The notes under the pieces: generated by a model
What the model saw: the letters and a program-made list of their open reading frames with translations, nothing else
Databases searched by the model: none
Told to the model about the DNA's origin: nothing
Shown: piece after piece, positions 167 through 41,105 of the stretch
Layout of the letters: the number at the start of each line of letters is the position of its first letter
Numbering within the stretch: position 1 is the stretch's first letter
IMG/VR virus record: IMGVR_UViG_3300020178_000002
Coordinates: 1 to 64,000 of that record
DNA: 64,000 nt
Direction: 5' to 3' (one strand)
Made by a program: the position numbers and the translations under genes

Positions 167-199
167 TACCTTACATTTGAACAAACATAATGTGAGGTA
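167..199 (+). promoter_or_regulatory. RBS-sequestering hairpin upstream of the endonuclease ORF
   Basis: taccttacatt (167-177) pairs with aatgtgaggta (189-199), one G-U, covering the GAGG SD before ATG 204. Confidence 0.6.
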
Positions 200-203
200 A
201 ATC

Positions 204-1424
204 ATGGGACAAAAAAAGTGTGGTAAATGCAACCAAGTTAAAGACACATCTGATTTCAATAGGGATAAATCTCGTAAAGATGGACTTCAACCCTCATGTA
301 AGGATTGTTTAAAAGCATATCGAGATGCAAACAAGCATAAGGCTAAAGCCTATAACGTGAGGTATCGGAAAGAAAACCAAGAGCAGATAAAAGAGCAAAA
401 GAGAAAGTATCGGGAGAGAAATAAAGAGGAAATAAGAGAAGGGAAAAAGCTCTGGAAAAGAGAGAAAAGAGCAAGACATAAAGAGGAATTACTCACCAAA
501 CACCAAAGGGGTGAGTGTTTAAATGAAGAAGAACAAAGACTAGTAGACCACTGGATAAGATCAGATTTTCTTCAATCTTTGAGTGTTGAGGAGAAAGAGC
601 TATTGGAAAAAAGTGAAAGTAAAAAGTACAGGGAGAGAAATAAAGAGCGGATAAAAGAGCAAAGTAAAAAGTACAAGGAGAGAAATAAAGAGCGGATAAA
701 AGAGCAAAGTAAAAAGTACAGGGAGAGAAATAAAGAGTGGATAAGGTTGAAATCAGAGGCAAAGAAAGTGTGGTCTGTATATCGGATAAACTTTAACGAC
801 AATACTTATTACATAGGGATGTCTAACAGACCAGACCAGAGATTTAACAAGCATAAAAGCCTATCCTTGAGAGGTCTTGCTCAAAACGTTTTAAATCAGA
901 AAGATTGGAGCGATGCTTCTTATGAAATACTAAGCCAACATAAGAGCGAAGCAGATTGCTTAGATGAAGAAAATAAACTTATAGGAGAGATGATGAATGA
1001 CCCTAATTGCCTTAATCAAAAAACAGAAAAGCGATCCAAGGACTATTGGGTATATGTCATACAGAGTGAACAAAAGAGATATGGTAAGAATGGTAAGGAG
1101 CTACCAGGTTTCTTCTATGTAGGGATGACAACAGACCCTACAAGAAGATTAAGAGAACACAACGGGCTGTATGCTAACGGTAAAGAGGGAAACCCAAAGG
1201 GTGGTAAGTACACATCTAAACATAGACCTTGGGTCGCAAGGGCTTGCTTTGGACCTTATGCTAGTAGATCCGAAGCCTTAAAAGCTGAGTACAAACTGAA
1301 AAGAACTAAGCGAGGTGCTTCTAGGTGCAAGTGGTCATCTAAGGACTCGCCTTTATGTGTGGGTTTAGGTGAGGCACACCCTTGGGTTTCGGATTCCTCT
1401 GGTTGGAAGCCACCAAAGCAATGA
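204..1424 (+). CDS. Double GIY-YIG protein: Zn finger + basic repeats + homing-type GIY-YIG fused to an SLX1-like GIY-YIG
   Basis: N-terminal CxxC...CxxC; KKYRERNKERIKEQS repeats; first domain VYRI...YYIGMS...RFNKH...E; second domain VYVI...FYVGMTTDPTRRLREHNG...GGKYT..RPW...SEALKAEYKLK. Confidence 0.85.
   Translation: MGQKKCGKCNQVKDTSDFNRDKSRKDGLQPSCKDCLKAYRDANKHKAKAYNVRYRKENQEQIKEQKRKYRERNKEEIREGKKLWKREKRARHKEELLTKHQRGECLNEEEQRLVDHWIRSDFLQSLSVEEKELLEKSESKKYRERNKERIKEQSKKYKERNKERIKEQSKKYRERNKEWIRLKSEAKKVWSVYRINFNDNTYYIGMSNRPDQRFNKHKSLSLRGLAQNVLNQKDWSDASYEILSQHKSEADCLDEENKLIGEMMNDPNCLNQKTEKRSKDYWVYVIQSEQKRYGKNGKELPGFFYVGMTTDPTRRLREHNGLYANGKEGNPKGGKYTSKHRPWVARACFGPYASRSEALKAEYKLKRTKRGASRCKWSSKDSPLCVGLGEAHPWVSDSSGWKPPKQ
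616..744 (+). repeat. 45-bp coding tandem repeat (~2.9 copies)
   Basis: Unit aaagtaaaaagtaca(g/a)ggagagaaataaagagcggataaaagagc starts at 616, 661 and 706. Confidence 0.95.
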
Positions 1425-1484
1425 GGTCTTAGCAGACTTTCTTACTTGTTGACTCTGGATAACATATACAGTCCATTCACTCAT
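1425..1484 (-). pseudogene. N-terminal remnant of the same SLX1-like GIY-YIG gene
   Basis: GAGGG SD (1491-1495, minus), then ATG 1484: MSEWTVYVIQSQQVRKSAKT, similar to DYWVYVIQSEQKRYGK in ORF 204..1424. Similarity ends at that ORF's stop codon. Confidence 0.8.
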
Positions 1485-1550
1485 CTTATTCCCTCTCAAA
1501 TAGATTTGTTAGTTGGTATTATAGGATATTTAATCAAAGGATGAAGACTA

Positions 1551-1733: not shown

Positions 1734-1746
1734 TACCTTTTTTATA
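1731..1746 (+). promoter_or_regulatory. putative phage late-type promoter TAATA-N6-TTATA
   Basis: taata cctttt ttata; the motif recurs at 10198, 15867, 21731, 40265 and 58853 (minus). Confidence 0.6.
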
Positions 1747-1782
1747 TTTCAAAGTTGTTAAACTTGAAAAAGGCAGGCAACT

Positions 1783-2388
1783 ATGAAATATGCAGGTATA
1801 GGACTTAAGTCAGTTCAGAAAGTCTTTCCAGGACTAACAGATAGACAAGCAAACGAGCTACTTCATGCTCTTGCAGGGTTTATCTATACTTTACCCTTAG
1901 AAAAAATAAGGTTTGAGAAGATCGAAGGAGATATGACAGTCTCAGATACACCTTATGTACATCCTTCAAGTCCTAGGCGAGAAGACTATGAGAGAGAGGG
2001 TGTTATAGGTGGTGTTCTCTCTGGGTTAGTCAGAATTGACTTAGATGAGCTTGAAGATGACTTGAGCTTTGAGATAGAAGAATACAGTGAAGATACATCT
2101 GGATTAAGGGGTATTGCTTCTTCTTTAACTAAGAACATCAACCATAACTTTCTTAAGGCAAGTAATATATTTAGCTTAAGTGATGTATATGCACCTGTTC
2201 AAAACCTTATTGAAGCACCTTATGGTTATGAGGTTAAGCAGAAAGAGTTGTATGAGTATGACTATCAAGTTGAGGCTCTGTTCTTTAGAGGAGAGATTCT
2301 TTTTGCAAAGGTAAGATACGAAGCTATTTATGATGTATACGCAGAGATAAAAAGCTCTAGGCATAGATATTTTGATGAGGATGACTGA
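1783..2388 (+). CDS. hypothetical protein
   Basis: 201-aa ORF after the TAATA-N6-TTATA motif; begins MKYAG. Confidence 0.75.
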   Translation: MKYAGIGLKSVQKVFPGLTDRQANELLHALAGFIYTLPLEKIRFEKIEGDMTVSDTPYVHPSSPRREDYEREGVIGGVLSGLVRIDLDELEDDLSFEIEEYSEDTSGLRGIASSLTKNINHNFLKASNIFSLSDVYAPVQNLIEAPYGYEVKQKELYEYDYQVEALFFRGEILFAKVRYEAIYDVYAEIKSSRHRYFDEDD

Positions 2389-2419: not shown

Positions 2420-2438
2420 CCCCCCTTTTTTTTGATAA
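2420..2438 (+). promoter_or_regulatory. putative promoter motif, C-run...TTGATAA
   Basis: Same arrangement at 3601, 14534, 20179 and 28842, always intergenic and shortly upstream of an ATG. Confidence 0.55.
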
Positions 2439-2478
2439 GTAGAGCTACAACTAAACTTATTAAAGAAAGGTATTTACT

Positions 2479-3355: not shown

Positions 3356-3404
3356 GTAGCTTTCTGTTAAGTTTTCTCTTAGAGTTGCAGAAAAGGAGAG
3401 AGCT

Positions 3405-3593
3405 ATGTGGCACTTAGAAAAAATAGTCGAGATGAACCAGCCAAAAGACGAACCACCTAAGGAAAAAGAAATCCAGCTAGAGACTGAAGATCTCCTTCTT
3501 ATTAAAGAAGAGCTTAGGAAGTCTAAGGAGCTTTTGTTAGAGTTGAGAGAGCTGGTAAAGGGTACTCGAGAGATACTAAAAAATAATAGCTGA
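3405..3593 (+). CDS. small coiled-coil protein
   Basis: AAGGAG SD; heptad-rich 62-aa ORF. Confidence 0.65.
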   Translation: MWHLEKIVEMNQPKDEPPKEKEIQLETEDLLLIKEELRKSKELLLELRELVKGTREILKNNS

Positions 3594-3671
3594 AAATCCA
3601 CCCCCCCCACTCCTTATTTGATAAGAAAACCATTAATAAGGTTTTTTTAAAAAAAATAAGGAGTAGGATAT

Positions 3672-4214: not shown

Positions 4215-4219
4215 TTAAG

Positions 4220-7694: not shown

Positions 7695-8358
7695 TTTGTG
7701 GATAAGGGAGGGTTTAGCTGACCCTCTATCAGAATACTTAAATTACTTAGTATCAAGAGGTGTGGATGAAAGCTGTAAAGTCAGCTTCCATTCTTGGCAG
7801 ACTCATGAAAATATCAAGTGTACGAGATTCTTGAGTCAATATGGCAATGGGGGTCGAGGTATCTCCTCTCATCTAGTTATACCTATCACCTCACCTAGAG
7901 GTGTTATCATAGGTATGGAGTCTAGAAAAATAATGCCAGATGGTTCTAAAAAAGTGATACAGTACAGAACTCTCTCTGCTCAATGGAATCCATATATACT
8001 TGGTGCAGAAGATTGTTTTAAAACCTTACATGAAGGTGGTGACCTATGGGTAGTAGAGGGCATCTTTGATAAGGTTTCTTTAGATAAGGTTGTCTCAAAG
8101 TATGATTCTGTCATAGCAACCTTAAGGGCTGGTATGGATAGTCTAACTCTTGAAATGATCTCAAGATACTATTCTAAGGCCAGTACCATTTACATCTGTT
8201 ATGATAATGATGAGACAGGTCAAAAGAAAGCTAAGTGGTTGCAGAAAGAGATGCAAGCAAAGGGTATTAGGGCAGTAGTCTGGAAATACAGAGGGAAAGA
8301 CCCTAATGAAGTCTGGTCAAAAGGTGGGGATCAAGCACTAAGGAGAATGTTCCTTTAA
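7687..8358 (+). CDS. DNA primase Toprim-domain protein
   Basis: YLVSRGV, LVIPI, WVVEGIFD, ICYDNDETGQK, KDPNE. No N-terminal Zn finger in this ORF. Confidence 0.85.
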   Translation: MNDLWIREGLADPLSEYLNYLVSRGVDESCKVSFHSWQTHENIKCTRFLSQYGNGGRGISSHLVIPITSPRGVIIGMESRKIMPDGSKKVIQYRTLSAQWNPYILGAEDCFKTLHEGGDLWVVEGIFDKVSLDKVVSKYDSVIATLRAGMDSLTLEMISRYYSKASTIYICYDNDETGQKKAKWLQKEMQAKGIRAVVWKYRGKDPNEVWSKGGDQALRRMFL

Positions 8359-8966
8359 TATAAGTCAACTAGAATAGGTTCAGGATTTCTAAAAGAAGCC
8401 TGCTTGATCCCATCTGACTTGCTGAAGAACATGCTTTTTATTTTCTTGTAAATACCAAAATCTACAAGAACTAAATAAGCCACCATACCTATGAGCATGA
8501 GCTTTGTTAGGAACAATCCTACATTAATAACAAAGAGAGATCCCATAGATAGCTTACAAGCATAAAAAAGGCCATGTGATAAAGCGACCCAGAAATAGTC
8601 ATCCGCATGAATTATGCTTTGCTTTGCTTTTTTAGAAGCTCTGTCGAATCTACTTTCCCACAAATCAGAGAGGTATTTTACCCTAGCCTTGAAAGTAGGC
8701 AGGCGGTTGACATTTGAAAGGACTTCTTTTTCCAATTCAGAAGGATTCTTTCCTACTCTATCAATCTCTCTTCCGATAGATCCCAGACTGTCTAGGTCAC
8801 TCTCTTCCAAAAGTTCTTTCATATTCTTGAGTTCTTTTCTGTTTTGCTTTCTGGTTAGGTTTAAGCTTTTTTCGAACTCTTCAATCTTCTCTTCTATCCA
8901 GCTCCCTGCAACTTTGCTTTCAAGTCTGGCAATCCTCATTTCTAGGCTTCTTATTTTCTTATTCAT
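8355..8966 (-). CDS. IRSLEMRIARLE-leader protein with C-terminal hydrophobic segments
   Basis: Start reassigned to MNKKIRSLEMRIARLESKVAG (ATG 8966, AAAGGG SD); the longer ORF call overlaps the divergent gene. Confidence 0.75.
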   Translation of the reverse strand: MNKKIRSLEMRIARLESKVAGSWIEEKIEEFEKSLNLTRKQNRKELKNMKELLEESDLDSLGSIGREIDRVGKNPSELEKEVLSNVNRLPTFKARVKYLSDLWESRFDRASKKAKQSIIHADDYFWVALSHGLFYACKLSMGSLFVINVGLFLTKLMLIGMVAYLVLVDFGIYKKIKSMFFSKSDGIKQASFRNPEPILVDLY

Positions 8967-8975: not shown

Positions 8976-9030
8976 CCTTTGTAAGTTGTTTATAGCTCTC
9001 CTCATGCACTTGATAAATAACTTACAAAGG
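8976..9030. repeat. 18-bp inverted repeat between divergent leader-family genes
   Basis: cctttgtaagttgtttat (8976-8993) vs ataaataacttacaaagg (9013-9030), 17/18 match. Confidence 0.9.
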
Positions 9031-9935: not shown

Positions 9936-9975
9936 AAATCATTGGTAGAATCCTGTATCAACATAGGAGCTACCA

Positions 9976-10203
9976 ATGAGTAAAGATAAGTACGAAAAAA
10001 TCAATCACCCTAATCACTACCAATCCGAAAAGATGGAAGCGATAGAGGTGATTGAAGCTTATAACCTCAATTTCTCTTTAGGCTCTGCTGTCAAATATAT
10101 ACTCAGAGCAGGCAAGAAACCTGGAGAGTCTTCTATTGAAGATTTAAAAAAAGCGATCTGGTATCTTGAGAGGGAAGTTAAAAGGCATAGCGATCTTCAA
10201 TAG
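9976..10203 (+). CDS. DUF3310 family protein
   Basis: INHPNHY...EAIEVIE...FSLGSAVKYILRAGKK...EDLKKAIWYLERE signature. Confidence 0.9.
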   Translation: MSKDKYEKINHPNHYQSEKMEAIEVIEAYNLNFSLGSAVKYILRAGKKPGESSIEDLKKAIWYLEREVKRHSDLQ

Positions 10204-10213
10204 TTTTCTTATA
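10198..10213 (+). promoter_or_regulatory. putative late-type promoter
   Basis: caata gttttc ttata. Confidence 0.55.
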
Positions 10214-10245
10214 CATTACTCTTAATAAAAAACTTGGAGTATAAG

Positions 10246-11520
10246 ATGAGAAATCTAACAGCATCACAAAGAGTTGCCTCTTTGCATATTGCAAAAATGG
10301 AAAAAGAAGCTTTTCTTCTTGAAGCCATAAAAGAGAAGCTGCTATTAGGCACATTGACTACAGAAGCAAAAAGACAGAGTAAAGAAATGTCCTCTGAAGC
10401 TCGAAAAGGCATGAGGATGTTCTTTAATGACTCTGGTATAAACAGCCCTAAGAAGTTTACAGATTATATGGCAAGCGGTAAAGTTGACCTCAAAGACCCT
10501 TTTTCAAAGCTTCTTCATAGAGTGTGTAAGGGAAAATCTGTAGGTGAGGTTGGCGATATTGGTGGTAGGTTCTTCTCAGCTTACTATAAAAAAGACATCG
10601 AGGGGATGGCAGATGTTGTAGGAGTTGATGAAAAGGTGATGATGATCACTTGTATGCACTACATGAAAGACAGCCCCAAGATCAATTCTTTGGTTAAAAA
10701 AGGAGAGGACAGACTTAACAAGGCTTTATATGACAGAGTGCAAGAAACTTATCAGCTATATGTTGAAGAAAAGGCTCGGCAAAACCCAAACCAAAAACGT
10801 GGTAGTGATGCTATCTGGTCAAAGGAATTTGCTCAATTTTGCAAAGACCTTTGGCAGAATTCAGGAGATGCCTCTAAATTCGTAGATACTCTATTGACAT
10901 ATCTTAACGACAATATCATAAAAGATATGTTAGATGGCATTGTGGCTAAAGTGCCCATTGAGCATGAGATGTCTGCTGCCATCATGAAAGGCTTTTTCGG
11001 TGTTGTTGGATCTGTGGCTTCTTGGGTTGAGTGGGCTTTAGGTGGGGCTGTTTGGGCTTTGGGCTATGTTTTCACTATGCTTGTAGATGTTGAAAAGGGA
11101 GATGTCCTGCCCTATGTCTGGTCAACAGTTAGAGAAGTGTTACAAATAGGTTGGGTTATCCTTTCTCATGGGATAAAGCTTTGCTTTAATGTTCTCTCAA
11201 CGGGTCTTGTTTTAACAGCAGGGTTCTTAGGTCCTGCTTTTATTGTCAAGTTCCTCTTAGTAACTGTTGTTGCTTATCAAATATACCTATTTATGGCATG
11301 GGGTAACTATAAACTTACTGAATTACCAAAAGTTATATTCTGGGACTTCCCTAAAGCAATGCTCAAAAAGCTTTGGGATTTAGTCACAAATGGTGTCTAC
11401 AAGATGGACTCTAAAGCTAAGAAAGTTATAGTACAAGAAGTAGAGAAAGCAAAGAAGAAGTTGCCTGCACTTAAACCAGTACCTGCTGGAAGAGGCAGAA
11501 ATAGGTACTCAATGCCTTAA
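10246..11520 (+). CDS. leader-family protein with extensive hydrophobic C-terminal half
   Basis: MRNLTASQRVASLHIAKMEKEAF; GGAG SD before ATG 10246; several TM-like stretches. Confidence 0.8.
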   Translation: MRNLTASQRVASLHIAKMEKEAFLLEAIKEKLLLGTLTTEAKRQSKEMSSEARKGMRMFFNDSGINSPKKFTDYMASGKVDLKDPFSKLLHRVCKGKSVGEVGDIGGRFFSAYYKKDIEGMADVVGVDEKVMMITCMHYMKDSPKINSLVKKGEDRLNKALYDRVQETYQLYVEEKARQNPNQKRGSDAIWSKEFAQFCKDLWQNSGDASKFVDTLLTYLNDNIIKDMLDGIVAKVPIEHEMSAAIMKGFFGVVGSVASWVEWALGGAVWALGYVFTMLVDVEKGDVLPYVWSTVREVLQIGWVILSHGIKLCFNVLSTGLVLTAGFLGPAFIVKFLLVTVVAYQIYLFMAWGNYKLTELPKVIFWDFPKAMLKKLWDLVTNGVYKMDSKAKKVIVQEVEKAKKKLPALKPVPAGRGRNRYSMP

Positions 11521-15882: not shown

Positions 15883-15919
15883 ATCAGCCCTCTTTTGACA
15901 AAGACACAAGGAGGGTAAA

Positions 15920-18805: not shown

Positions 18806-18844
18806 ATAAGTTAATCTCAACTCAAGAATAAAGGATTAACTTAT
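18806..18844 (+). promoter_or_regulatory. hairpin covering the SD edge and AUG of the endonuclease gene
   Basis: Perfect 11-bp pair ataagttaatc / gattaacttat. Confidence 0.7.
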
Positions 18845-20117: not shown

Positions 20118-20240
20118 TCAGATGCTTGATGAGCTTCAGAGAGAAATAGATTCTCTAAAGAGAGACCTAAATAAAAAACCCCCCCCAGAATCCTATTGAT
20201 AAGAGGTGTATTACAATAACTATTATTAAAAGGATTTTAT

Positions 20241-22612: not shown

Positions 22613-22677
22613 AAAACTTCTATCTTGCTCTCTTAGTTCTATAATGGGTCTTACTATTTAACTAAAGAGAGGAAGAT

Positions 22678-25215
22678 ATGATTTTTTATTCCGAGAAAGA
22701 TGTTGAGGTTCATTTTCGCAAGGTTTTAGAAGATGCAACAGGAGAACATTTTAAAACACTTCGTAAGGTAAAAAACTCAAAAGGAAGACATTGGGAAACA
22801 GATGGTGTAATAGAATGGCAAACACCTTCAAAAACACCTGTTAGAGTTCTTTTAGAAGCCAAATTTGGTGCTGACTTTAAGAAAGCAACTTCAAGAAGTT
22901 CGGTTTTAGCTCAAGCTTTGTTTTACTGTAAGCGTTTTGAGGAACAGGGAGATGACTTACCAAATGTAATATTTATTGGAGATGAGGAATACTGTTTCGC
23001 AGTTCCTATGTCTTCCCTTAAATCTTTTTTAGAAGCAGAGGTAGATTGGTCAAGAGCACCATCAAATCCAGATCCTTCTTTAGAAGTTAATGTAGATACT
23101 CATTTAGAAAGTACTCTTGGAGTAGATGGTGAGCATTTAAAGCAACTTTGTGAGGGATTGGCTAGTGCTTGTCTTCAAAAGGTAAAGCCTTCACCTCAAA
23201 ACATCTCTGCAATGTATCAATATTGGGTAGATCAAATATTCTTAGAGGGTCACTCATACACACCTGTTGAGATGACAGACATTTTTTTTGGTTGTGTGTT
23301 CTACTCAGAGATTGACGAACATTATGTTCAAGAACACAGGGTTAAAAAGAATACTATCATGATGAGTGGTAAAGAGTACAACATCAATGTTTCAGCTATG
23401 AGAGGTTTTTTCCAGCGTAGGGAAAGAGGTCTTTCTAAAAAAGATGTGGATGAACTTGTTTCCATGAGAGACCGAATTATAGAAGATGATACAAGACGCA
23501 GGCAAGGTGCTTTTTATACCCCTACTCTATGGGTAGCAGAAGCTCATAAAGAAATGGAGAAAGAGTTAGGGGAAGATTGGAGGGATGAATGTGTTGTCTG
23601 GGATTGTTGCTCTGGGACAGGGAATATTACTCGAGACTATGATTTTCAAAATCTAATTCTTTCCACAGCAGAGAAGCCAGATGTTGATGTTATTAAAAGA
23701 GAGTGTTACAACGAGGGTGCATTTGTATTCCAATATGACTTCTTGAATCCAGAAGATGAAAGTCCTTTCTTTACAGGTGACTCTGACAACGTATTACCTT
23801 TAAAGGTAAAAAAGATGTTAAAAAAGGCTGCTGAGGAAGATAAGAGGATAGTATTTTTAATAAACCCTCCTTATGCAGAGGATGGTGTTGCAGGGGCTAA
23901 AGGAAATACTCGTAAAGGGGTTGCAAGTAACACTCTTGTGAACAGTGAGATGCCAAAGTTAGGCAGAGCAAATAGACAATTATATGCCCAATTCCTATAC
24001 CAATGTGAAAAGGTAAGTAGAGATTATGGTTTTGACAAAAAGACCATAGGGATTTTCTGCCCTTCCATATTTATGTCCTCTGGGTCTTTTAGTAAGTTTA
24101 GAGAATGGTGGTATGCAAAGTATTCATACAAGTCAGGGTTTTTGTTTCAGGCATCACACTTTGCTGACGTTAAAGGGTCTTGGGGTATTTCCTTTACACT
24201 TTGGAGTGAAGGTAATACAGCATTAGAAAGCAATCTTCCTCTTTTATTAAAAGACACATGTCAAGCTGAGAAAGTTAGTGTTATTGGGGATAAGAATTTA
24301 TATTCACCCTCAGCATCTTCGGCATCTTCTTGGGTTTCAGCTCTTTCACCTGCTTCTTCTAATATAGACACACCAAAGTTTTCTAGTGGTCTTAAAGTTA
24401 AAGAATCTGTAAGCAATGACAAAGGTATTGATCAAGATGCTTTGGGGGTCATGTGCAATATGGGCAATAGTTTAATGAAGTCTGCTACAGATGTTTATTT
24501 TATATCTGGAAAGCCCTCTCATAAAGGATGCTGTAATTTCCCTTTGGTTGAAGGAGAAGGGTGGAGAAGGGCTATTTCCTTATTCTCAGCTAGAAAGCTT
24601 GTTTCATCTAATTGGGTTAACCAGAAAGATGAATACCTAATACCTGATGTAAGCAAAGAGGGTTATGAAGATTGGGTTGATGATTGCCATGTATATGCTC
24701 TTTTACACTCTTCTAATAACATAGTTTCAATGAGAAGCCTCGATTACAAATCTAAGAAGTGGGATATTTATAATCACTTCTTTTGGATGAGTAGAGCAGA
24801 GGCTATGGAGTTGTATGGAGAGAGCAAGGAAGCTAAGTCTCTTTATCGAGATGCTAGAAACAACCCAATCTCTTATAATAAGAGTTCTGGGCAAGTTAAA
24901 GAGTGGAGAAAAAATGGAGATCCTTACTTCTCATATATTCTCCCTAAGCTAACTCTTTCTTCACTCTCAAGAGAAATCTTGAGTGATCTTCAAAAGCTCT
25001 TTATTGAGACTATACCTTATAGGTCGCAGATAACACATGAAAAAGGCTTAGACTTACACTTAGGCTCATGGGATGCTGGCATCTACCAGCTTAATAAGAT
25101 TTGGAAGCAATTACCTATTTTGAATAAAAAGTGGGAAGCTTTGAAAGTAAAGCACAGACAACTTGGTAAAAACCTAGAGCATGGAGTATATACTTTTGGG
25201 TTTTTGAAGAAATGA
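22678..25215 (+). CDS. fused restriction endonuclease / amino-methyltransferase (Type IIG-like)
   Basis: N-terminal TDGV...VLLEAKF...AQALFY nuclease; GAFYTP; motif I VWDCCSGTGN; motif IV INPPY; LYAQF; C-terminal TRD-sized region. Confidence 0.85.
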   Translation: MIFYSEKDVEVHFRKVLEDATGEHFKTLRKVKNSKGRHWETDGVIEWQTPSKTPVRVLLEAKFGADFKKATSRSSVLAQALFYCKRFEEQGDDLPNVIFIGDEEYCFAVPMSSLKSFLEAEVDWSRAPSNPDPSLEVNVDTHLESTLGVDGEHLKQLCEGLASACLQKVKPSPQNISAMYQYWVDQIFLEGHSYTPVEMTDIFFGCVFYSEIDEHYVQEHRVKKNTIMMSGKEYNINVSAMRGFFQRRERGLSKKDVDELVSMRDRIIEDDTRRRQGAFYTPTLWVAEAHKEMEKELGEDWRDECVVWDCCSGTGNITRDYDFQNLILSTAEKPDVDVIKRECYNEGAFVFQYDFLNPEDESPFFTGDSDNVLPLKVKKMLKKAAEEDKRIVFLINPPYAEDGVAGAKGNTRKGVASNTLVNSEMPKLGRANRQLYAQFLYQCEKVSRDYGFDKKTIGIFCPSIFMSSGSFSKFREWWYAKYSYKSGFLFQASHFADVKGSWGISFTLWSEGNTALESNLPLLLKDTCQAEKVSVIGDKNLYSPSASSASSWVSALSPASSNIDTPKFSSGLKVKESVSNDKGIDQDALGVMCNMGNSLMKSATDVYFISGKPSHKGCCNFPLVEGEGWRRAISLFSARKLVSSNWVNQKDEYLIPDVSKEGYEDWVDDCHVYALLHSSNNIVSMRSLDYKSKKWDIYNHFFWMSRAEAMELYGESKEAKSLYRDARNNPISYNKSSGQVKEWRKNGDPYFSYILPKLTLSSLSREILSDLQKLFIETIPYRSQITHEKGLDLHLGSWDAGIYQLNKIWKQLPILNKKWEALKVKHRQLGKNLEHGVYTFGFLKK

Positions 25216-25925: not shown

Positions 25926-25983
25926 TTTTTTTATTTCTTCTATACTTCTATATTCGATAATAGATAGTAAAAAGGAGAAATAA

Positions 25984-26814
25984 ATGACTAAACTACCTAC
26001 AAAAATATCAGTTTATTGGGACTATCAAGACAGCCTATACGAAATTCTCGAAGAAGAAGAGATTGAGAATCTAACAGTAGAAGAGAAGCTGGAAGAGCTG
26101 GGTCTTGAAAGAGAAATCGAAATTCCAAGAAACATACTTCTAGAGATGGCTCTCACTCCAAAAGATGATAGAGAATTCCTTCTTTCGGATTATTTGTCAG
26201 ACACTTATGGCTACACCCATTTTGGCTGGGTTGTTATGGAAGAAAAAGCTCTGAAAGATATGGAATTTAGAAATGTCTATGTCGGAGACTTGGAAGACAG
26301 CTTCGCATCTTTAAACCTAGATGGGTTAAGGCTAAGTAAGTCTGAAATGCATGTTACTTTCAAAGATGTTCACTTTAAGGGTGCTGTTTTTACAGGGTCT
26401 GATATTAAGTCTTCCTCATTTATGAATTGTGGAATGGCTTCTGCTAACTTTACGGGGTGTGATCTTAGAGAAGTCTACTTTGCTTACTGTGACCTTAAAG
26501 ATGTAGACTTCACAGGTGCTGATGTAAAAGGTGCTATCTTTAAGAAATGTAAAAACTTGACCATAGAGCAACTTAGAAAAGTAAAGTCTGGGTTCATAGA
26601 TATTGAAATAGGAGATATTTTAAAATCGACAACCTCCACAGAACAATATGTAGTGATTGCTGTTAAAGGCGACAAGATTAAAATGAGAAACATAAGAACA
26701 GGTCGTAAATATATTAGGAAAGCTGTTTTTGATAACTCTGGGCATCAGGGCAAAGTTATGATTTCAGTGATAGATAATCGTAGAAACATCTACTATAACT
26801 TTAAGAGGAAGTAA
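25984..26814 (+). CDS. pentapeptide repeat protein with acidic N-domain and small C-terminal beta domain
   Basis: AVFTGSDIK, ANFTGCDLR, VDFTGADVK. Confidence 0.85.
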   Translation: MTKLPTKISVYWDYQDSLYEILEEEEIENLTVEEKLEELGLEREIEIPRNILLEMALTPKDDREFLLSDYLSDTYGYTHFGWVVMEEKALKDMEFRNVYVGDLEDSFASLNLDGLRLSKSEMHVTFKDVHFKGAVFTGSDIKSSSFMNCGMASANFTGCDLREVYFAYCDLKDVDFTGADVKGAIFKKCKNLTIEQLRKVKSGFIDIEIGDILKSTTSTEQYVVIAVKGDKIKMRNIRTGRKYIRKAVFDNSGHQGKVMISVIDNRRNIYYNFKRK

Positions 26815-26817
26815 GTT

Positions 26818-27558
26818 ATGAAGAATTTAAATAACCTTGAAGAAAGAGTATCAAACCTAGAGAAGAAGTCTGCTCGTAAGAGAAAGACTATCGGAGATAC
26901 AGTTAAGGACCTAGAGTTCCTAAGATCTGCACACCCAGATAATCTTAGTGCCTCTGAGCTAACTAGAATAGTTAAAGATAGAAGAATCTCTAAAGAGTTG
27001 AAAGCAGCGATTAGAAGTTATGTTAAAACTCAAGCTAAATATTTTGAGCTTCGTGATAAGAGACTAGATCTTTCTCGTTTAATTAAGGGTCTCTCTAGAA
27101 CAGAGAAAGAAACAGTAGCATTAGCCTATTCTGACAAAATGGATCTGATAGTAGAGAAACTTACCTCTGCTATTAAGCAGACTACTTTGACTTATAATGG
27201 GAAGAAGTTAAGTCCTGGTATCCATGTAGAAAAGACAGAGAATGGTCAAAATAATGGTGTGTTCGACAATAGAAAATTCAGAGTCAAGTTTATTTTTAAG
27301 CCTTATGACTTTGCACACTATATCTTTGCTGTCTATCCAAATAGGCATGTCAGGACAAAGGTATTGCCTAATGGCTTTGACCAAGACGATTTCTTTTCAA
27401 AGCTATCTGATGCCTTTGGGAAAAGTATTGAGAGACACCTGCCAGGTTTTACTTCGATAATAAGTAGTTATGACCTTGTAAACGCAAACTATCATGGCAA
27501 TGGTGTGTTAGATATTACAGTTGATGGATTAATCCATTACATAGAGAAGAAGAAATAA
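26818..27558 (+). CDS. leader-family protein
   Basis: MKNLNNLEERVSNLEKKSA. Confidence 0.75.
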   Translation: MKNLNNLEERVSNLEKKSARKRKTIGDTVKDLEFLRSAHPDNLSASELTRIVKDRRISKELKAAIRSYVKTQAKYFELRDKRLDLSRLIKGLSRTEKETVALAYSDKMDLIVEKLTSAIKQTTLTYNGKKLSPGIHVEKTENGQNNGVFDNRKFRVKFIFKPYDFAHYIFAVYPNRHVRTKVLPNGFDQDDFFSKLSDAFGKSIERHLPGFTSIISSYDLVNANYHGNGVLDITVDGLIHYIEKKK

Positions 27559-27559
27559 A

Positions 27560-28828
27560 ATGGCTAATCCAATACATGTAGAAAAAGCCTTAAGTGGTGA
27601 GAAGGATCTAAGAAACCTAGACCTGTCTGGTGCTAATTTAAAAGGAGCTGAACTTACAGGAGTTGACCTAAGAGGTTCTAACCTTAAAGGAACTAACCTT
27701 AAAAATGCTGAATTGGCAGGCTCTGATTTCAGAGGTTGCACCTTTGACAAAAATACTAAGCTAATTATGGCTCGGTTAAGCGATTCAGACTTTAGAGGTG
27801 TTAACTTCAATGGTTTAACTCTCTTTTATCTTGTCACAGTAAGGTCTGATTTTTCTGGTGCTAGTTTTGTGGGGTGTACAATAGATATTTTCAAATCAGA
27901 AAAAGCTAACTTTACAGGTGCAGACTTTACAGGTGCTACTCTGAAGGATACAGACTTTACAGAAGCTAATCTTTCAAAGGCTAAGTTTGTAAGAGCAAAT
28001 CTTAAACTCGCTAGCCTAGGAGGTGCTAACATAACAGATGCAGACTTCACTAAGGCTGATCTTAGTGGTGTATTTTTCAGGAAAGTTGATTTAAGTACAG
28101 CAGCTTCCTTTTCTGGTGCTACGTTTGTTAATGCTAAGATGCCTCATGCTAAACTCAAAGACATGGATCTTTCCAATGTAGATTTCACAGGTGTAGACCT
28201 CTTTGGTGCAGATTTGTCTGGTTCTATTCTCAGAGGTTGTTTGTTTGAGAGCACAGAAGCTAATCGGGCTCTCTTTCATGGGTCTATTTTAGAAGAAGCT
28301 ATCTTTTTATATAGTAAAATTAGCGGTTGTAGTTTTATGAATGCAAAAGTTAAAGGTGCTAGCTTCACAAAGTGTAATCTGAATAGATCAGGCTTTCATG
28401 GATCAGACTTAACTGGTGTCTCCTTTGATGGTGGAGATCTTATCTTTTGTGGGTTTGTTAATACTGAGATTAAAGGTGCAACTTTCAAGAATGTTGATTT
28501 AAGATACTCTGACTTCTACAAAGCAACAGGAGAAAAATCTGCTACCTTCTCAAAAGTGGAAGCACAGAAAATCAAAGCTGGTGATGTTCTTACTAGTCAA
28601 CACCCTAACATGAGAGACACTGAGTTGGATGTTATTAAAGTAACTCCAAAGATGCTTTTAGTAGCTCTCAATTTAGGGGATCTAGGCATTAAGACTTATA
28701 GGAAGAAGAGGAAATTGGGTCTTGTTCGAGTAGGTGATAACACTACTTACTACGCTGAGTATGTGGATTATAATAAATACAAAGTCACAAGTGTTAAAGC
28801 ATATGATACATGGAGCTTATTAAGTTAG
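27560..28828 (+). CDS. long pentapeptide repeat protein
   Basis: Over 300 aa of A(D/N)(L/F)xx repeats plus a C-terminal non-repeat domain. Confidence 0.92.
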   Translation: MANPIHVEKALSGEKDLRNLDLSGANLKGAELTGVDLRGSNLKGTNLKNAELAGSDFRGCTFDKNTKLIMARLSDSDFRGVNFNGLTLFYLVTVRSDFSGASFVGCTIDIFKSEKANFTGADFTGATLKDTDFTEANLSKAKFVRANLKLASLGGANITDADFTKADLSGVFFRKVDLSTAASFSGATFVNAKMPHAKLKDMDLSNVDFTGVDLFGADLSGSILRGCLFESTEANRALFHGSILEEAIFLYSKISGCSFMNAKVKGASFTKCNLNRSGFHGSDLTGVSFDGGDLIFCGFVNTEIKGATFKNVDLRYSDFYKATGEKSATFSKVEAQKIKAGDVLTSQHPNMRDTELDVIKVTPKMLLVALNLGDLGIKTYRKKRKLGLVRVGDNTTYYAEYVDYNKYKVTSVKAYDTWSLLS

Positions 28829-28899
28829 TTTTTTTTTAAAACCCCCTGACTAGTTATTGATAATAAGAGTAATTAGTCTAATAAAGAAAGGGGGTTACT

Positions 28900-30426
28900 A
28901 TGAACAACTATTATGTTACAACACCTATATATTATGTGAACGACACACCTCATATAGGTCATGCTTATACAACAATAATAGCAGACACATTAGCTCGTTG
29001 GGAAAAGATTAAAGGTAATGATACTTACTTTTTAACAGGAACTGATGAGCATGGTTTAAAGATTGAACAGTCTGCTAAAAATAAAGGTGTGTCTCCACAA
29101 GAATTAGTAGATGATGTCTCACAGAGCTTTCGAGATCTTTGTTTAAAAGTAGATAGTTCTCCTAATGACTTTATCCGTACAACTGAATCTCGACACAAAG
29201 AAGTTGTTAAAGATCTCTGGCTTAAGCTAGTAGAATCAGGTGACATTTACTTAGGAGAGTATTCAGGTTGGTATAGCGTTAATGATGAGGCTTATTTCAC
29301 AGAAGATGAAATAGTTGATGGTAAAGCACCCTCTGGTCACAAAGTTGAATGGTTAGTAGAAAAATCTTATTTCTTTAGACTTTCTAAGTACACGGATTTG
29401 CTTCTCAATCACTTTGATGAGAACCCAGACTTTATCCAGCCAAAGAAAAGACTGAATGAAGTTAGAAGTTTTGTTAAGCAAGGGTTAAAAGACATTTCTA
29501 TATCAAGAAGCACATTTTCTTGGGGTATAGAAGTTCCAGAAGACCCTGAGCATGTAATCTATGTGTGGCTTGATGCTTTAGCTAACTACATTAGTGGTTT
29601 GGGTGGTTTCGAGGGTTCTCTTTTCGAGAAGTATTGGGGAAACTCACACCATATCATTGGGAAAGATATTCTCCGATTCCATGCTGTGTATCTCCCCTGC
29701 TTCTTACTTAGCGTTGGTGAAGATCTTCCAAAGAAGATTATTGCACATGGCTGGTGGACAGCAGAGGGTGAAAAGATTAGCAAGAGCAAGGGGAATGCCA
29801 TTGACCCTAATAAAGTAATTGATGCAATAGGAAGTGATTCCTTTAGGTATTTCTTACTACGAGAGATCTCATTAGGTTCTGATGGAGACTTTAGCTATAA
29901 CTCATTAGTTTCTAGAATAAACTCTGACCTCTCTAATGAATATGGGAATCTTGTTAGTAGAACGCTAGGCTTACTTAAGAAGTATAGAGCCTCTAAGATA
30001 CCAGAGTCCTATGAGCTAGGGCTAGATGAGGTAGAATTGCTCAAGGTGATTAACTCTTCAAAGAGTGAATTAGAGCTTGCCTTTGACAACTACCGCTTAA
30101 ATGATGCTTTGAAAGCAATCTGGAAAGTGGTTAAGGCAGGCAATAAGTATGTGAACGACACAGCACCTTGGGTTCTCTACAAAGAGGGTAAAGATAAAGA
30201 CCTAGATAGGGTTTTATACACTCTTGTAGAGCTCTTAAGAGTCATTGGTATTTGGACTTCTCCTTTCTTGCCAACTTCTTCAAAGAAGCTTTTAGATAGT
30301 CTTGGAGTGGTCAATAGAGATTTCCAATCTTCTATTAAGTGGTTTGTATTAAAGCCCAACACCGAAATCAAAGACTCTTTGCAACTGTTTCCTCGCTTAA
30401 ATCTAAAACCAGAGGACATCAAATAA
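28900..30426 (+). CDS. metG: methionyl-tRNA synthetase (short form)
   Basis: YYVTTPIYYVNDTPHIGHAY, LTGTDEHGLKI, FIRTT, YVWLDAL.NY, IGKDILRFH, KISKSKGN, anticodon domain with APW. Confidence 0.97.
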   Translation: MNNYYVTTPIYYVNDTPHIGHAYTTIIADTLARWEKIKGNDTYFLTGTDEHGLKIEQSAKNKGVSPQELVDDVSQSFRDLCLKVDSSPNDFIRTTESRHKEVVKDLWLKLVESGDIYLGEYSGWYSVNDEAYFTEDEIVDGKAPSGHKVEWLVEKSYFFRLSKYTDLLLNHFDENPDFIQPKKRLNEVRSFVKQGLKDISISRSTFSWGIEVPEDPEHVIYVWLDALANYISGLGGFEGSLFEKYWGNSHHIIGKDILRFHAVYLPCFLLSVGEDLPKKIIAHGWWTAEGEKISKSKGNAIDPNKVIDAIGSDSFRYFLLREISLGSDGDFSYNSLVSRINSDLSNEYGNLVSRTLGLLKKYRASKIPESYELGLDEVELLKVINSSKSELELAFDNYRLNDALKAIWKVVKAGNKYVNDTAPWVLYKEGKDKDLDRVLYTLVELLRVIGIWTSPFLPTSSKKLLDSLGVVNRDFQSSIKWFVLKPNTEIKDSLQLFPRLNLKPEDIK

Positions 30427-30466
30427 AAAAAAGACTCATATTGTTTATGATATGGGTCTTTTTTTT
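30425..30466. terminator. probably bidirectional intrinsic terminator
   Basis: A-run, agactcatat / atatgggtct stem, T-run. Confidence 0.8.
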
Positions 30467-30494
30467 GCTTAGGGAGATTTATATATCTTCTATT

Positions 30495-30537
30495 AACCTC
30501 AATGTCTGTGAGATAATATTTACAGAACATTGAGGTT
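30495..30537 (+). promoter_or_regulatory. RBS-sequestering hairpin ahead of the baseplate operon
   Basis: aacctcaatgt / acattgaggtt (11-bp perfect) plus inner ctgtga / ttacag; covers GAGG. Confidence 0.7.
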
Positions 30538-30543
30538 TTTTTT

Positions 30544-40267: not shown

Positions 40268-40280
40268 TACTCTTTTTATA
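40265..40280 (+). promoter_or_regulatory. putative late-type promoter
   Basis: taata ctcttt ttata. Confidence 0.6.
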
Positions 40281-40317
40281 AACAACTTTTATCTAAACAC
40301 TCACTAAGGAGAACACT

Positions 40318-41019
40318 ATGTTCAATATCAAAGGTTATGTAGAGGCTACTTTCAGAGACTCTGAGGGAAATGTAATTCAATACGAAGAGGGTCATAATAC
40401 AGTTGTTCAAATGTCTAGCAATATTATCATGGACAATATTCTTCCCAGACTCGGAGCTTCTGGAACAGCTACGGGAGTATCAAATCGCCCTGAAGCTACT
40501 AACATGGATGATGATACCACATTCCCTAATGGTGGTAACTACATTGGTCCAGCAGGTGCAAGTACAAACACTTCTGCAGCTCATGCAATCAATAACATTG
40601 CTTACATTGCAGTAGGTGACAACTTGGGCACAGATTCAGCAGGAAATGCCCATTCCTCACAGAATGCAGATGTTGCAAGTGCAAGCACACAAGTTAACAT
40701 GGTAGATGATAGCTTTAGCCTGACAAGCACAAACCCTTATTTTGCTCGTTTGGTTGATTCTGTGAGTTTCCCTGCATACAACCAGATTCGATTCACTACT
40801 ACCTTTGCACTTGGTGAGGGTAATATCACAAATGGCATTGCAGAGATTGGTTTGTGGACTGCTGGTGATAATGTTGATGCAGATGGTTTTGCAAACACCA
40901 CAACACCAACTGTGACAACTAACATGAGACTTTTTGCTAGAAAAGTTTTGGATAACACCATTACTAAGACTGATGATGGTACTCTTGAAATAAACTACAC
41001 CATCACATTCAACGCTTAA
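40318..41019 (+). CDS. tail-collar/baseplate-type structural protein
   Basis: HNTVV...YIAVG...FTTTFALGEGN...IAEIGL...LFARK...ITKT...LEINYTITF pattern. Confidence 0.65.
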   Translation: MFNIKGYVEATFRDSEGNVIQYEEGHNTVVQMSSNIIMDNILPRLGASGTATGVSNRPEATNMDDDTTFPNGGNYIGPAGASTNTSAAHAINNIAYIAVGDNLGTDSAGNAHSSQNADVASASTQVNMVDDSFSLTSTNPYFARLVDSVSFPAYNQIRFTTTFALGEGNITNGIAEIGLWTAGDNVDADGFANTTTPTVTTNMRLFARKVLDNTITKTDDGTLEINYTITFNA

Positions 41020-41105
41020 TTTTTTCTTGTTATGAGGTTCGAGAGGGATATTTTTTAGTTGTTTTATCACCTCCATATCGTACCCCATAACCTGTGGAGG
41101 AAAAT

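What the first reader, a model, noticed from the sequence alone, without database searches (positions are those of the whole stretch)
167..41100. Widespread promoter-in-hairpin design: RBSs masked on read-through RNA, freed by the gene's own promoter
Seen: many first-in-unit genes have an upstream arm complementary to their SD/AUG region. Pairs: 167-177/189-199; 3357-3365/3397-3405; 3609-3619/3654-3664; 8976-8993/9013-9030; 9940-9948/9970-9978; 10207-10214/10239-10246; 18806-18816/18834-18844; 22621-22638/22660-22678; 25930-25941/25973-25984; 28840-28858/28868-28896; 30495-30505/30527-30537; 41070-41077/41093-41100. In most, a promoter-like -10 (TATAAT, TAGAAT, TTGATAA or TTATA) lies in the 5' arm or loop. 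Known: T4 uses this logic for a few genes (e, soc, 49, I-TevI). Inference: here it is general and spans several promoter classes, insulating each gene's timing from upstream transcription.
Basis: partly seen in the sequence, partly recalled or inferred. Interest (0 to 1): 0.75.

Follow-up and report, generated by a model that had tools for sequence, protein, structure and literature searches.

The report
RBS-masking leader hairpins in jumbo phage
About a third of the transcription units at the start of this uncultured 312-kb marine phage begin with an RNA hairpin that hides the ribosome binding site; one hairpin is kept across a whole phage family, and the layout looks like the known phage T4 trick in which a gene's own promoter, placed inside the hairpin, frees the site.

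Summary
All 12 arm pairs exist as written. Against dinucleotide shuffles and against other genes' SD segments, 7 are clearly non-random (204, 3672, 9976, 18843, 22678, 25984, 30544). The 8976/9013 repeat is real but lies between divergent genes. Three are intermediate (3405, 28900, 41106). One is chance (10246), and its pairing is lost in an 80% relative. I found five more (1783, 2479, 15920, 20241, 25212).

With one automated pipeline, 7/18 first-in-unit genes pass here, against 8/51 in T4, 1/26 in phiKZ and 2/35 in T5. No operon-internal gene passes in any of them.

The hairpin before the gp25-like baseplate gene 30544 is kept in diverged relatives down to about 40% protein identity. Its stems are replaced entirely (10/11 pairs with compensatory changes). 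A TTTAT motif sits at its 5' foot.

The promoter-in-hairpin reading is plausible but unproven. Generic -10 hexamers are not enriched. Two specific motifs are: C-run–TTGATAA, and TTTAT. Both lie in or beside the 5' arm. Metatranscriptome contigs begin inside 3 of 3 hairpins examined. No transcription start site is mapped.

The parts
167..199 (+). Hairpin (arms 167-177/189-199) masking the SD of gene 204-1424, an HNH / GIY-YIG homing-endonuclease-like gene
   Evidence: 11 bp, 1 G:U; rank 0.035; cognate ranks 2/0; for the annotation. No promoter motif was found.
1744..1791 (+).
   Evidence: I16, 14 nt, 93%; opening cost 14.3 kcal/mol
2420..2470 (+). C-run 2420-2425, TTGATAA 2432-2438, and arms 2425-2440/2455-2470 masking the SD of gene 2479
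   Evidence: Kept in L213 with a G:C to G:U change. Opening cost 8.8 (long RNA) against 3.9 (short RNA).
3357..3405 (+). Hairpin 3357-3365/3397-3405 before gene 3405 (intermediate support)
   Evidence: rank 0.175; ranks 1/4. Arms are unchanged in L213 while the loop changed.
3601..3667 (+). C-run 3601-3608, arms 3606-3619/3654-3667, TTGATAA 3618-3624, and an inner small hairpin with a T-run; masks the SD of gene 3672
   Evidence: z -6.4, rank 0. L213 keeps it with one mismatch. Opening cost 19.2 against 3.3 kcal/mol.
8976..9030 (.). 18-nt inverted repeat between divergent genes 8355-8966(-) and 9039-9935(+); each arm holds one gene's SD; TTGATAA at 9010-9016
   Evidence: L213 shows a compensatory A:U to G:C change and a G:U to A:U change, with a strongly diverged loop.
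9940..9978 (+). Hairpin 9940-9948/9970-9978 masking the SD and AUG of gene 9976; TAGAAT at 9946-9951 lies in the 5' arm
   Evidence: z -5.2, rank 0.005; ranks 0/0; opening cost 18.5 against 2.1
10207..10246 (+).
   Evidence: rank 0.28; ranks 20/18; pairing lost in L213
14534..14568 (.). C-run–TTGATAA site before gene 14597, inside the palindrome TTGATAACTAACCTTATCAA (14549-14568) between divergent genes; weak masking only
   Evidence: rank 0.105; one search shows no change (5.2 against 5.0)
15889..15914 (+). Hairpin CCCTCTTTT/AAGGAGGG masking the SD of gene 15920; TTTATAAT lies just upstream (15877-15884)
   Evidence: rank 0.03. Arms are kept and the loop replaced in L085, whose protein is 95% identical.
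18806..18844 (+). Hairpin 18806-18816/18834-18844 masking the SD and AUG of homing endonuclease gene 18843-20117; TTGACC-N16-TATAAG overlaps the 5' arm
   Evidence: 11/11 bp; rank 0.000; (PHROG homing endonuclease)
20179..20238 (+). C-run 20179-20186, TTGATAA 20196-20202, arms 20187-20202/20223-20238 masking the SD of pentapeptide-repeat gene 20241 (new)
   Evidence: rank 0.000, P(SD paired) 0.91
22621..22678 (+). Hairpin of about 17 bp masking the SD and AUG of gene 22678-25215; TCTAT at the foot (22619-22623) and TATAAT in the loop (22640-22645)
   Evidence: rank 0.000. The L085 orthologue (59% identity) has different arms that again hold the SD. Opening cost 23.5 against 4.7-7.7.
25930..25984 (+). 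Hairpin 25930-25941/25973-25984 masking the SD of gene 25984; TTTAT at the foot; TATACT, TATATT and GATAAT in the loop
   Evidence: rank 0.000. RNA contigs start at 25974 and 25982 with depth near zero upstream. Opening cost 13.2 against 0.8-3.2.
28826..28910 (+). Imperfect inverted repeat around the MetRS start (28900); C-run 28842-28846 pairs with the GGGGG of the SD; TTGATAAT at 28857-28864
   Evidence: I8; ranks 0/1; rank 0.2. RNA contigs: one starts at 28888, and one reads through 28493-29054.
30489..30543 (+). Leader of gp25-like baseplate gene 30544: TCTAT 30489-30493, arms 30495-30505/30527-30537, loop motif GTGAGATAATATTTA 30508-30522, and T8 before the ATG. A separate intrinsic terminator lies at 30425-30466.
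   Evidence: z -6.4; orthologues; 92% of cells paired against 72% shuffled, 10/11 pairs compensatory; an RNA contig starts at 30528
41063..41100 (+). TTTAT 41063-41067 and arms 41070-41077/41093-41100 before gene 41106 (intermediate support)
   Evidence: ranks 1/0; rank 0.21. L085 keeps it with an A:U to G:U change. Distant orthologues vary. The modelled short RNA stays closed.

Best explanation
These are cis-acting leader hairpins in the mRNA. An upstream arm pairs with the Shine-Dalgarno and/or start codon of the first gene of a transcription unit, so any RNA that carries the whole leader, such as read-through from the unit upstream, is poorly translated.

The unit's own promoter element lies in or right beside the 5' arm. 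It is TTTAT/TCTAT at the foot of the stem, TTGATAA within or after the arm, or a TATAAT-like hexamer in the loop. Its transcripts therefore start inside the hairpin, lack the masking arm, and are translatable. This is the logic shown for T4 genes e, soc, 49 and I-TevI (PMC3014915). Here it is used at roughly a third of the units of an uncultured 312-kb marine or salt-marsh phage, and it is fixed for the baseplate module across its wider family.

Shown: the complementarity, its restriction to first-in-unit genes, its conservation and covariation, and the motif enrichment and positions.

Inferred: that the motifs are promoters, where transcription starts, and that translation differs between long and short RNAs.
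For: - Non-random, cognate-specific pairing occurs only at first-in-unit starts.
- The predicted RBS opening cost is 11-23.5 kcal/mol on long RNA and 1-8 on RNA started 7 nt after the motif. Internal genes give 3.5-9.
- Fourteen of 15 baseplate-gene orthologues tested beat the shuffles, and their stems are entirely different.
- A covariance-model alignment gave 92% of cells paired against 72% shuffled, 47 doubly changed cells against 15, and 10/11 stem pairs with compensatory changes.
- The model also found the same 'TTTATC + hairpin + SD + ATG' module before other genes.
- Hairpins are kept in L085 for 15920, 22678 and 41106, and in L213 for 2479, 3405, 3672 and 8976/9013.
- TTTAT occurs within 75 nt upstream of 73% of first-in-unit genes and 6% of internal genes in relatives. 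It peaks at -50..-41 and ends 0-7 nt into the stem foot.
- C-run–N6-10–TTGATAA occurs at 5 sites in the window, against 0.21 expected. All are on the + strand, 37-48 nt before an ATG. TTGATAA occurs in 7 upstream regions against 0.38 expected.
- RNA contigs from metatranscriptomes begin at 25974/25982, 28888 and 30528. All are past the 5' arm, with depth near zero upstream for two of them. One read-through contig spans 28493-29054. By chance P is about 4e-4.
- Two of the genes are homing endonucleases, a class known to carry such hairpins (PMC3014915).
Against: - No TSS is mapped.
- The RNA evidence is assembled contigs of mixed strains. Contigs also break at an internal gene start (27567/27576), and DNA contigs of other samples end at the same baseplate junction. 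The ends may therefore mark strain or module junctions or processing sites.
- Generic -10 hexamers and sigma-70 promoters are not enriched.
- TTTAT is AT-rich, and its complement doubles as the SD-AUG spacer in many stems.
- For 41106 the short RNA is still predicted closed.
- Three of 4 extra TTGATAA-class sites lack masking.
- 30544 is preceded by a strong terminator, so little read-through is expected there, yet its hairpin is the best conserved.
- The conserved loop motif GTGAGAnAAnATTT is not explained by this model.
Confidence: 0.55

Rival explanations
1. Constitutive translational operators. The whole hairpin is part of each gene's normal mRNA, with the TSS at or upstream of the foot. 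It sets a low or regulated translation rate. It would be opened by a phage or host factor, as Com opens the mom leader of phage Mu, or bound by a repressor, as with RegA or coat-protein operators. It could also serve as a 5' stabilising stem.
For: - The loop motif GTGAGAnAAnATTT is conserved in about half of the clades while the stems turn over. It does not recur elsewhere in the window, which looks more like a binding site than a general promoter.
- The 30544 hairpin is conserved although a terminator already blocks read-through.
- The 41106 leader stays closed in the short model.
- The Mu com/mom and RegA comparisons rest on established knowledge and were not tested here.
Against: - RNA contigs start downstream of the 5' arm at 3/3 hairpins.
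- TTTAT/TTGATAA motifs sit where a -10-type element would place the start inside the arm.
- The loop motif is absent from the L025-L034 clade and from the paralogous modules, which still keep the hairpin.
Confidence: 0.25
2. RNA processing sites. The hairpins are cut by RNase III or another endonuclease. This separates cistrons and releases the RBS, so the 5' ends seen inside the hairpins are cleavage products.
For: RNA contig ends inside hairpins are equally compatible with cleavage. Some orthologous stems reach 19-25 bp.
Against: Most stems in the window are 9-18 bp, which is short for RNase III. The conserved DNA motifs at the foot have no role in this model. The hairpins have no shared internal-loop architecture.
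Confidence: 0.08
3. Not RNA regulators. The pairs are intrinsic terminators, DNA-level palindromes (operators or recombination junctions of gene modules), by-products of pyrimidine-rich promoter elements, or chance.
For: - 10207/10239 is chance.
- In divergent pairs, the reverse complement of one gene's SD automatically lies upstream of the other's SD.
- The 8976/9013 repeat could be a duplicated leader or an operator.
- 30495-30537 and the inner 3672 hairpin are followed by T-runs.
- In 2479, and in one L165 site, the C-run is the 3' arm of a terminator-like stem.
- DNA contigs end at the baseplate junction.
Against: - The T-run is lost in most orthologues, whereas SD pairing is kept.
- None of the SD hairpins is scored terminator-like.
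- The arms differ from gene to gene, so they cannot mediate recombination within the genome.
- The 3' arm always lands on the SD and/or AUG.
- Cognate specificity and compensatory changes exceed the shuffled and slid controls.
Confidence: 0.07

Closest known systems
T4 RBS-sequestering leaders with an internal late promoter (genes e, soc, 49, I-TevI; also I-TevII/III, Aeh1 mobE, segB) – PMC3014915
   Same: An upstream arm pairs with the SD and/or AUG. The region that encodes the 5' strand also carries a promoter-type element. Homing endonuclease genes are among the targets. My pipeline recovers T4 gene 49 (rank 0.005) and I-TevII (0.000), and e is borderline at 0.065.
   Different: The phage family is different. 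The putative promoter motifs are different: TTTAT and C-run–TTGATAA rather than TATAAATA. The frequency is higher: 39% against 16% of first-in-unit genes under the same test. The targets include a baseplate module and a tRNA synthetase. TSSs and translation effects are not demonstrated here.
T4 gene 25 'split' translation initiation region (Nivinskas/Malys, cited in PMC3014915)
   Same: A conserved leader hairpin before a gp25-type baseplate wedge gene (PHROG baseplate hits for 30544).
   Different: In T4 the hairpin lies between the SD and the AUG and enhances initiation by bringing them together. Here the SD is inside the 3' arm and is masked.
Phage Mu mom leader opened by Com, and RegA / coat-protein translational operators (from established knowledge)
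   Same: A hairpin holds the initiation region, and a conserved single-stranded motif could be a protein site.
   Different: No factor is known here. The loop motif is limited to some clades, and motifs at the stem foot suggest promoter placement.
PeSL cassettes (promoter-early stem-loop) of T4-type hyperplastic regions
   Same: A stem-loop and a promoter packed together at gene-module borders. Contigs break at such a border here.
   Different: PeSLs are repeated sequences that promote shuffling. These arms are unique to each gene and overlap the RBS.

Membership tests
T4-type promoter-in-hairpin RBS masking | An upstream arm complementary to the SD and/or AUG of the gene, forming a stable stem on long RNA | tested here: met
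   7-8 of the 12 pairs are strong and 5 more were found; opening cost 11-23.5 kcal/mol
T4-type promoter-in-hairpin RBS masking | The structure is under selection (conserved or covarying in relatives) | tested here: met
   30544; 15920, 22678, 41106; 2479, 3405, 3672, 8976/9013. No diverged relatives were available for 204, 18843, 20241, 25984 and 28900. The 9976 region in L213 is 95% identical, which is too close to be informative.
T4-type promoter-in-hairpin RBS masking | The gene's own promoter lies so that its transcript starts downstream of the masking arm | tested here: inconclusive
   Motif positions and RNA contig starts at 25974/25982, 28888 and 30528 fit this. There is no TSS mapping, and the generic -10 test is negative.
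T4-type promoter-in-hairpin RBS masking | Longer transcripts from upstream promoters run through the hairpin | tested here: inconclusive
   One RNA contig spans 28493-29054. Most units lack a terminator before the hairpin, but 30544 has one.
T4-type promoter-in-hairpin RBS masking | Long RNA is poorly translated and short RNA is well translated | not testable with these tools
   Only folding predictions are available.
Intrinsic (rho-independent) terminator | A G+C-rich stem directly followed by a U-run, conserved as such | tested here: not met
   Only 30495-30537 and the inner 3672 stem have a T-run. It is absent from most orthologues, and none is listed by the terminator scan.
T4 gene 25 split-SD enhancing hairpin | The SD lies upstream of the hairpin, and the hairpin lies between the SD and the AUG | tested here: not met
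   The SD lies in the 3' arm in the window and in orthologues.
RNase III processing site | A double-stranded stem of about two helical turns (about 20 bp) | tested here: not met
   Window stems are 9-18 bp. Some orthologous stems reach 19-25 bp.
Known Rfam cis-regulatory RNA | A match to a curated covariance model at the gathering score | tested here: not met
   0 matches in the whole window

The most novel reading that the evidence does not exclude
The 'TTTAT-foot + SD-masking hairpin' module may be a family-wide regulatory grammar of a large clade of uncultured aquatic (marine and freshwater) jumbo phages. On this reading, a phage-specific promoter element is physically fused to a translational mask. 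The baseplate-gene leader, with its conserved loop motif GTGAGAnAAnATTT, would then be a new cis-regulatory RNA family that also binds a factor: a second layer of control on top of promoter-dependent unmasking.
Probability: 0.25. Interest if true: 0.65.

Novelty: new member of a known kind. Interest (0 to 1): 0.5.

Why it matters
If the model holds, this phage family separates 'when a gene is transcribed through' from 'when it is translated' at many units, using one compact DNA module.

That would matter in three ways:
- It would give a rule for reading expression timing from sequence in uncultured jumbo phages. Candidate promoter motifs are TTTAT and C-run–TTGATAA, and the masked units mark the genes whose timing matters: homing endonucleases, the baseplate module and a phage MetRS.
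- It would show that the T4 mechanism is an ancient or recurrent solution rather than a curiosity of a few T4 genes. The same test also flags 16% of T4 first-in-unit genes, which is more than the textbook four.
- It cautions annotators and expression engineers that cloning such genes with their native upstream region will silence them.

Tried and rejected
- A near-identity search of INPHARED found nothing. Single-protein related-locus searches returned only copies of the same phage.
- MAFFT plus RNAalifold on all baseplate leaders gave no consensus structure, because the stems are not alignable by sequence. A covariance model built from one clade solved this.
- I tried sense-versus-antisense folding asymmetry (G:U against A:C) as a test of RNA-level against DNA-level function. 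The sense strand was more stable in 27/33 hairpins. Coding controls selected for stability show the same bias (88%), so the test is uninformative.
- Generic -10 hexamers in hairpin segments are not above composition-matched shuffles. The sigma-70 scan shows no enrichment.
- The loop motif GTGAGAnAAnATTTA does not recur in the window, so it is not a general promoter.
- A collection-wide scan for CCCCCC-N5-12-TTGATAAG gave mostly unrelated hits. The four extra sites from this genome (L180) or from another viral contig of the metagenome that also holds a fragment of this phage (L165; whether it is the same phage was not checked) mostly lack masking.
- Rfam and tRNA scans were empty.
- The idea that the C-run is always a terminator arm is rejected. 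That holds for only 2 of 9 sites.
- Read laying allows one call, so only 3 hairpins could be compared with RNA.
Full report
**What the window is**

The 64-kb window is the first 64 kb of a 312-kb viral contig. That contig is IMGVR_UViG_3300020178_000002, equal to Ga0181596_10000003, from salt-marsh and marine metagenomes. It is 38% G+C and has no close relative in the INPHARED phage collection.

Its genes include the following:
- HNH/GIY-YIG and other homing endonucleases
- an intein-bearing ORF
- thymidine kinase, a Toprim protein and UvdE
- several pentapeptide-repeat proteins
- a methionyl-tRNA synthetase (28900-30426)
- a T4-like baseplate block: a gp25-like gene at 30544 and a gp6-like gene at 31581

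Genes use strong Shine-Dalgarno (SD) sequences. I curated 51 gene starts.

**Checking the observation**

All 12 arm pairs are present exactly as written, and every 3' arm overlaps an SD and/or AUG. I applied two tests.

Test 1 compared the duplex energy between the -18..+3 segment and -75..-20 with 200 dinucleotide shuffles of the upstream part.
- Twelve of 50 starts reach rank <=0.035, against about 1.75 expected.
- Eleven of the 12 have an upstream gap of at least 40 nt.

Test 2 asked whether a gene's own SD segment is the best partner of its own upstream region.
- Nine of 22 co-directional first-in-unit genes have the cognate pair in the top 3 of 50 in both directions.
- Only 1 of 18 operon-internal genes does.

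- Strong: 167/189, 3609/3654, 9940/9970, 18806/18834, 22621/22660, 25930/25973, 30495/30527.
- Strong but special: 8976/9013.
- Intermediate: 3357/3397, 28840/28868, 41070/41093.
- Chance: 10207/10239.

One confound applies to divergent gene pairs. The reverse complement of one gene's SD automatically lies upstream of the other gene's SD. I therefore counted those pairs separately.

**Calibration against other phages**

I ran the same fully automatic pipeline (gene calling plus shuffle test) on four genomes. The table gives first-in-unit genes at rank <=0.02.

| Genome | Passing | Share |
|---|---|---|
| This window | 7/18 | 39% |
| T4, 0-100 kb | 8/51 | 16% |
| phiKZ, 0-50 kb | 1/26 | 4% |
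| T5, 0-50 kb | 2/35 | 6% |

- No internal gene passed in any genome.
- The window differs from T4 at p=0.05 and from phiKZ plus T5 at p=0.0009.
- The method recovers T4 gene 49 and I-TevII. T4 gene e is borderline, and the A+U-rich soc stem is missed.
- The feature is therefore real and unusually frequent. It affects about a third of the units, not most of them.

**Conservation of the baseplate-gene hairpin**

A profile search for the baseplate protein returned 65 metagenomic loci at 25-100% identity.
- Down to about 40% identity, nearly every orthologue has a hairpin whose 3' arm holds the SD, and often the AUG as well. The stem sequences are completely different between clades.
- Fourteen of 15 orthologues tested beat the shuffles.
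- High-G+C relatives at 25-32% identity show no such hairpin.

A covariance model built from one clade aligned 18 distinct leaders.
- 92% of cells are paired, against 72% in shuffles and at most 65% when the partner column is slid.
- 47 cells are doubly changed, against 15 in shuffles.
- 10 of 11 stem pairs show compensatory changes.
- Caveat: the alignment was fitted to the model's own structure.

The model also found the same module, 'TTTATC + pyrimidine arm + loop + purine arm with SD + ATG', before unrelated genes in relatives. These are L036:1106, L045:7559 and L032:3214. L027:3981 and L045:2790 came from the shuffle test.

**Conservation of the other hairpins**
- In L085, a 73% relative, hairpins are kept before the orthologues of 15920 (same arms, new loop), 22678 (new arms, SD still inside) and 41106 (A:U to G:U).
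- In L213, an 80% relative of window positions 1.4-14 kb:
  - The 8976/9013 repeat shows a compensatory A:U to G:C change and a G:U to A:U change, while its loop has diverged heavily.
  - 2479 keeps its stem (G:C to G:U).
  - 3672 keeps its stem with one mismatch.
  - The 10207/10239 pairing is lost.

**Is there a promoter in the hairpin?**

- A >=5/6 TATAAT match occurs in 7 of 15 hairpin segments, against 5.9±1.8 in composition-matched shuffles.
- Sigma-70-type sites are not enriched.

Two specific motifs are enriched.
- C5-8–N6-10–TTGATAA
  - It occurs at five sites in the window, against 0.21 expected. All are on the + strand, 37-48 nt before an ATG.
  - TTGATAA occurs in 7 upstream regions, against 0.38 expected.
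  - The masking arm lies between the C-run and TTGATAA, overlaps TTGATAA, or is the C-run itself.
- TTTAT (or TCTAT)
  - In relatives it lies within 75 nt upstream of 73% of first-in-unit genes and 67% of divergent genes, but only 6% of internal genes (p about 1e-15).
  - It peaks at -50..-41, and in hairpin-bearing leaders it ends 0-7 nt into the foot of the stem.

If these motifs are -10-type elements, transcription would start inside or beyond the 5' arm. Folding predicts what that would do to the cost of opening -15..+3:
- It falls from 11-23.5 kcal/mol on long RNA to 1-8 kcal/mol on such short RNA.
- Internal genes give 3.5-9 kcal/mol.
- 41106 is the exception: it stays closed, at 10.2 kcal/mol.

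Masking is gene-specific and not tied to a promoter class. Three of four further C-run–TTGATAA sites show none. Two of these sites are elsewhere in this genome (L180). Two are on another viral contig of the metagenome that also holds a fragment of this phage (L165; whether it is the same phage was not checked).

**RNA evidence**

I used 25300-31200, which holds three hairpins.
- Metatranscriptome contigs begin at 25974 and 25982 (gene 25984), at 28888 (gene 28900) and at 30528 (gene 30544).
- All of these starts lie past the 5' arm. Depth upstream is near zero for two of the three genes.
- One contig reads through 28493-29054.
- Four of 16 contig left ends fall in the 121 nt between a 5' arm and its ATG. 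Chance gives P of about 4e-4.

This fits starts inside the hairpins together with some read-through, but it is weak evidence:
- These are assembled contigs of mixed strains.
- Contigs also break at an internal gene start (27567/27576).
- DNA contigs from other samples end about 50 nt before the same baseplate ATG (L005, L009, L037).
- The ends could therefore mark strain or module junctions, or processing sites.

**Interpretation**

The best-supported reading is the T4 logic described for genes e, soc, 49 and I-TevI, and for several homing endonucleases (PMC3014915).
- The RBS is masked on RNA that carries the full leader.
- It is open on RNA started from a promoter placed in or beside the masking arm.
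- Two of the masked genes here are homing endonucleases, which matches the precedent.

The main rival is a constitutive translational operator opened or bound by a factor. Three points favour it:
- The loop motif GTGAGAnAAnATTT is conserved in about half of the clades and is unique in the window.
- The 30544 hairpin persists behind a strong terminator.
- The 41106 leader stays closed in the short model.

Other rivals fit a few individual sites only:
- RNase III-type processing is unlikely for stems of 9-18 bp.
- Terminator, DNA palindrome and chance explanations apply to single cases. 10207/10239 is chance. 8976/9013 may be a duplicated leader or an operator.

T4 gene 25 also has a conserved leader hairpin, but that one sits between the SD and the AUG and enhances initiation. 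Here the SD is inside the stem.

**Verdict**

- The mechanism is of a known kind.
- New here are the phage family, the putative promoter motifs, the high frequency, and the deep conservation at the baseplate module.
- The decisive missing piece is 5'-end mapping.

Noticed in passing
window 2420-2438, 3601-3624, 14534-14555, 20179-20202, 28842-28863; L180 (same genome, about 294 kb); L165: A promoter-like motif: a run of 5-8 C, then 6-10 nt, then TTGATAA(G/T). It always lies 37-48 nt before a start codon (expected 0.21 in the window). It was not found in the fetched loci of relatives. I know of no described promoter with a C-run.
   Followed up: partly
relatives L022-L063; window 30489, 22619, 25930, 41063, 1739: TTTAT/TCTAT lies upstream of 73% of first-in-unit genes and 6% of internal genes in relatives, peaking 41-50 nt before the ATG. 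It is a candidate core promoter element of this phage family.
   Followed up: partly
window 30508-30522 and orthologous loops (L022, L024, L035, L038, L042, L044, L046, L053, L062): The loop motif GTGAGAnAAnATTT is conserved while the surrounding stem is replaced. It is unique in the window, and it resembles an SD-plus-spacer sequence. Its function is unknown.
   Followed up: partly
window 16413-17282 and 17279-18670, compared with L085:1351-2244: In the 73% relative, the orthologue of 15920 runs straight into the orthologue of 17279. That relative lacks residues of about 222-382 (Hint/intein domain) and lacks the TnsA-like endonuclease ORF. Both look like mobile insertions in the window's phage.
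   Followed up: partly
window 28900-30426: A phage-encoded methionyl-tRNA synthetase (Pfam tRNA-synt_1g, 7e-109). It is absent at this position in the 73% relative L085, whose gene content upstream of the baseplate gene differs.
   Followed up: partly
L005, L009/L089, L037 (contig ends 49-51 nt before the baseplate ATG): Independent DNA contigs end at the foot of the baseplate leader hairpin. This suggests a junction between a conserved baseplate module and variable upstream content in co-occurring strains.
   Followed up: no
window 18671-18790: Two copies of ACCCTATGTRGGCAGAGG about 80 nt apart lie in the 172-nt spacer before homing endonuclease gene 18843.
   Followed up: no
window 14549-14568: The perfect-armed palindrome TTGATAA-CTAACC-TTATCAA lies between divergent genes 13837-14481(-) and 14597-15028(+). 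It may be a bidirectional promoter or an operator.
   Followed up: no
window 25167-25206: Operon-internal gene 25212 (its ATG overlaps the upstream stop codon) has its SD region paired with an arm inside the upstream ORF (rank 0.01). This arrangement is typical of translational coupling.
   Followed up: no
T4 NC_000866 1-100000 (L216, L217): With the same test, 8 of 51 first-in-unit T4 genes show significant upstream complementarity to their SD and/or AUG. That is more than the four textbook cases. The starts flagged in the first run (rank <=0.035) include 8161, 13130, 15232, 40157 (gene 55) and, in record coordinates, 62740 (regB), 65355 (denV) and 77337 (gene 4).
   Followed up: no
window 20241-21185, 25984-26814, 27560-28828, 57200-58807(-); also 13837-14481(-) by its orthologue in L213: At least four pentapeptide-repeat proteins are encoded in 64 kb (Pfam for 20241 and 25984; PHROG families shared with them for 27560 and 57200). 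A fifth, 13837-14481(-), is inferred only from the Pfam hits of its L213 orthologue. Two of them (20241, 25984) sit behind masking hairpins.
   Followed up: no
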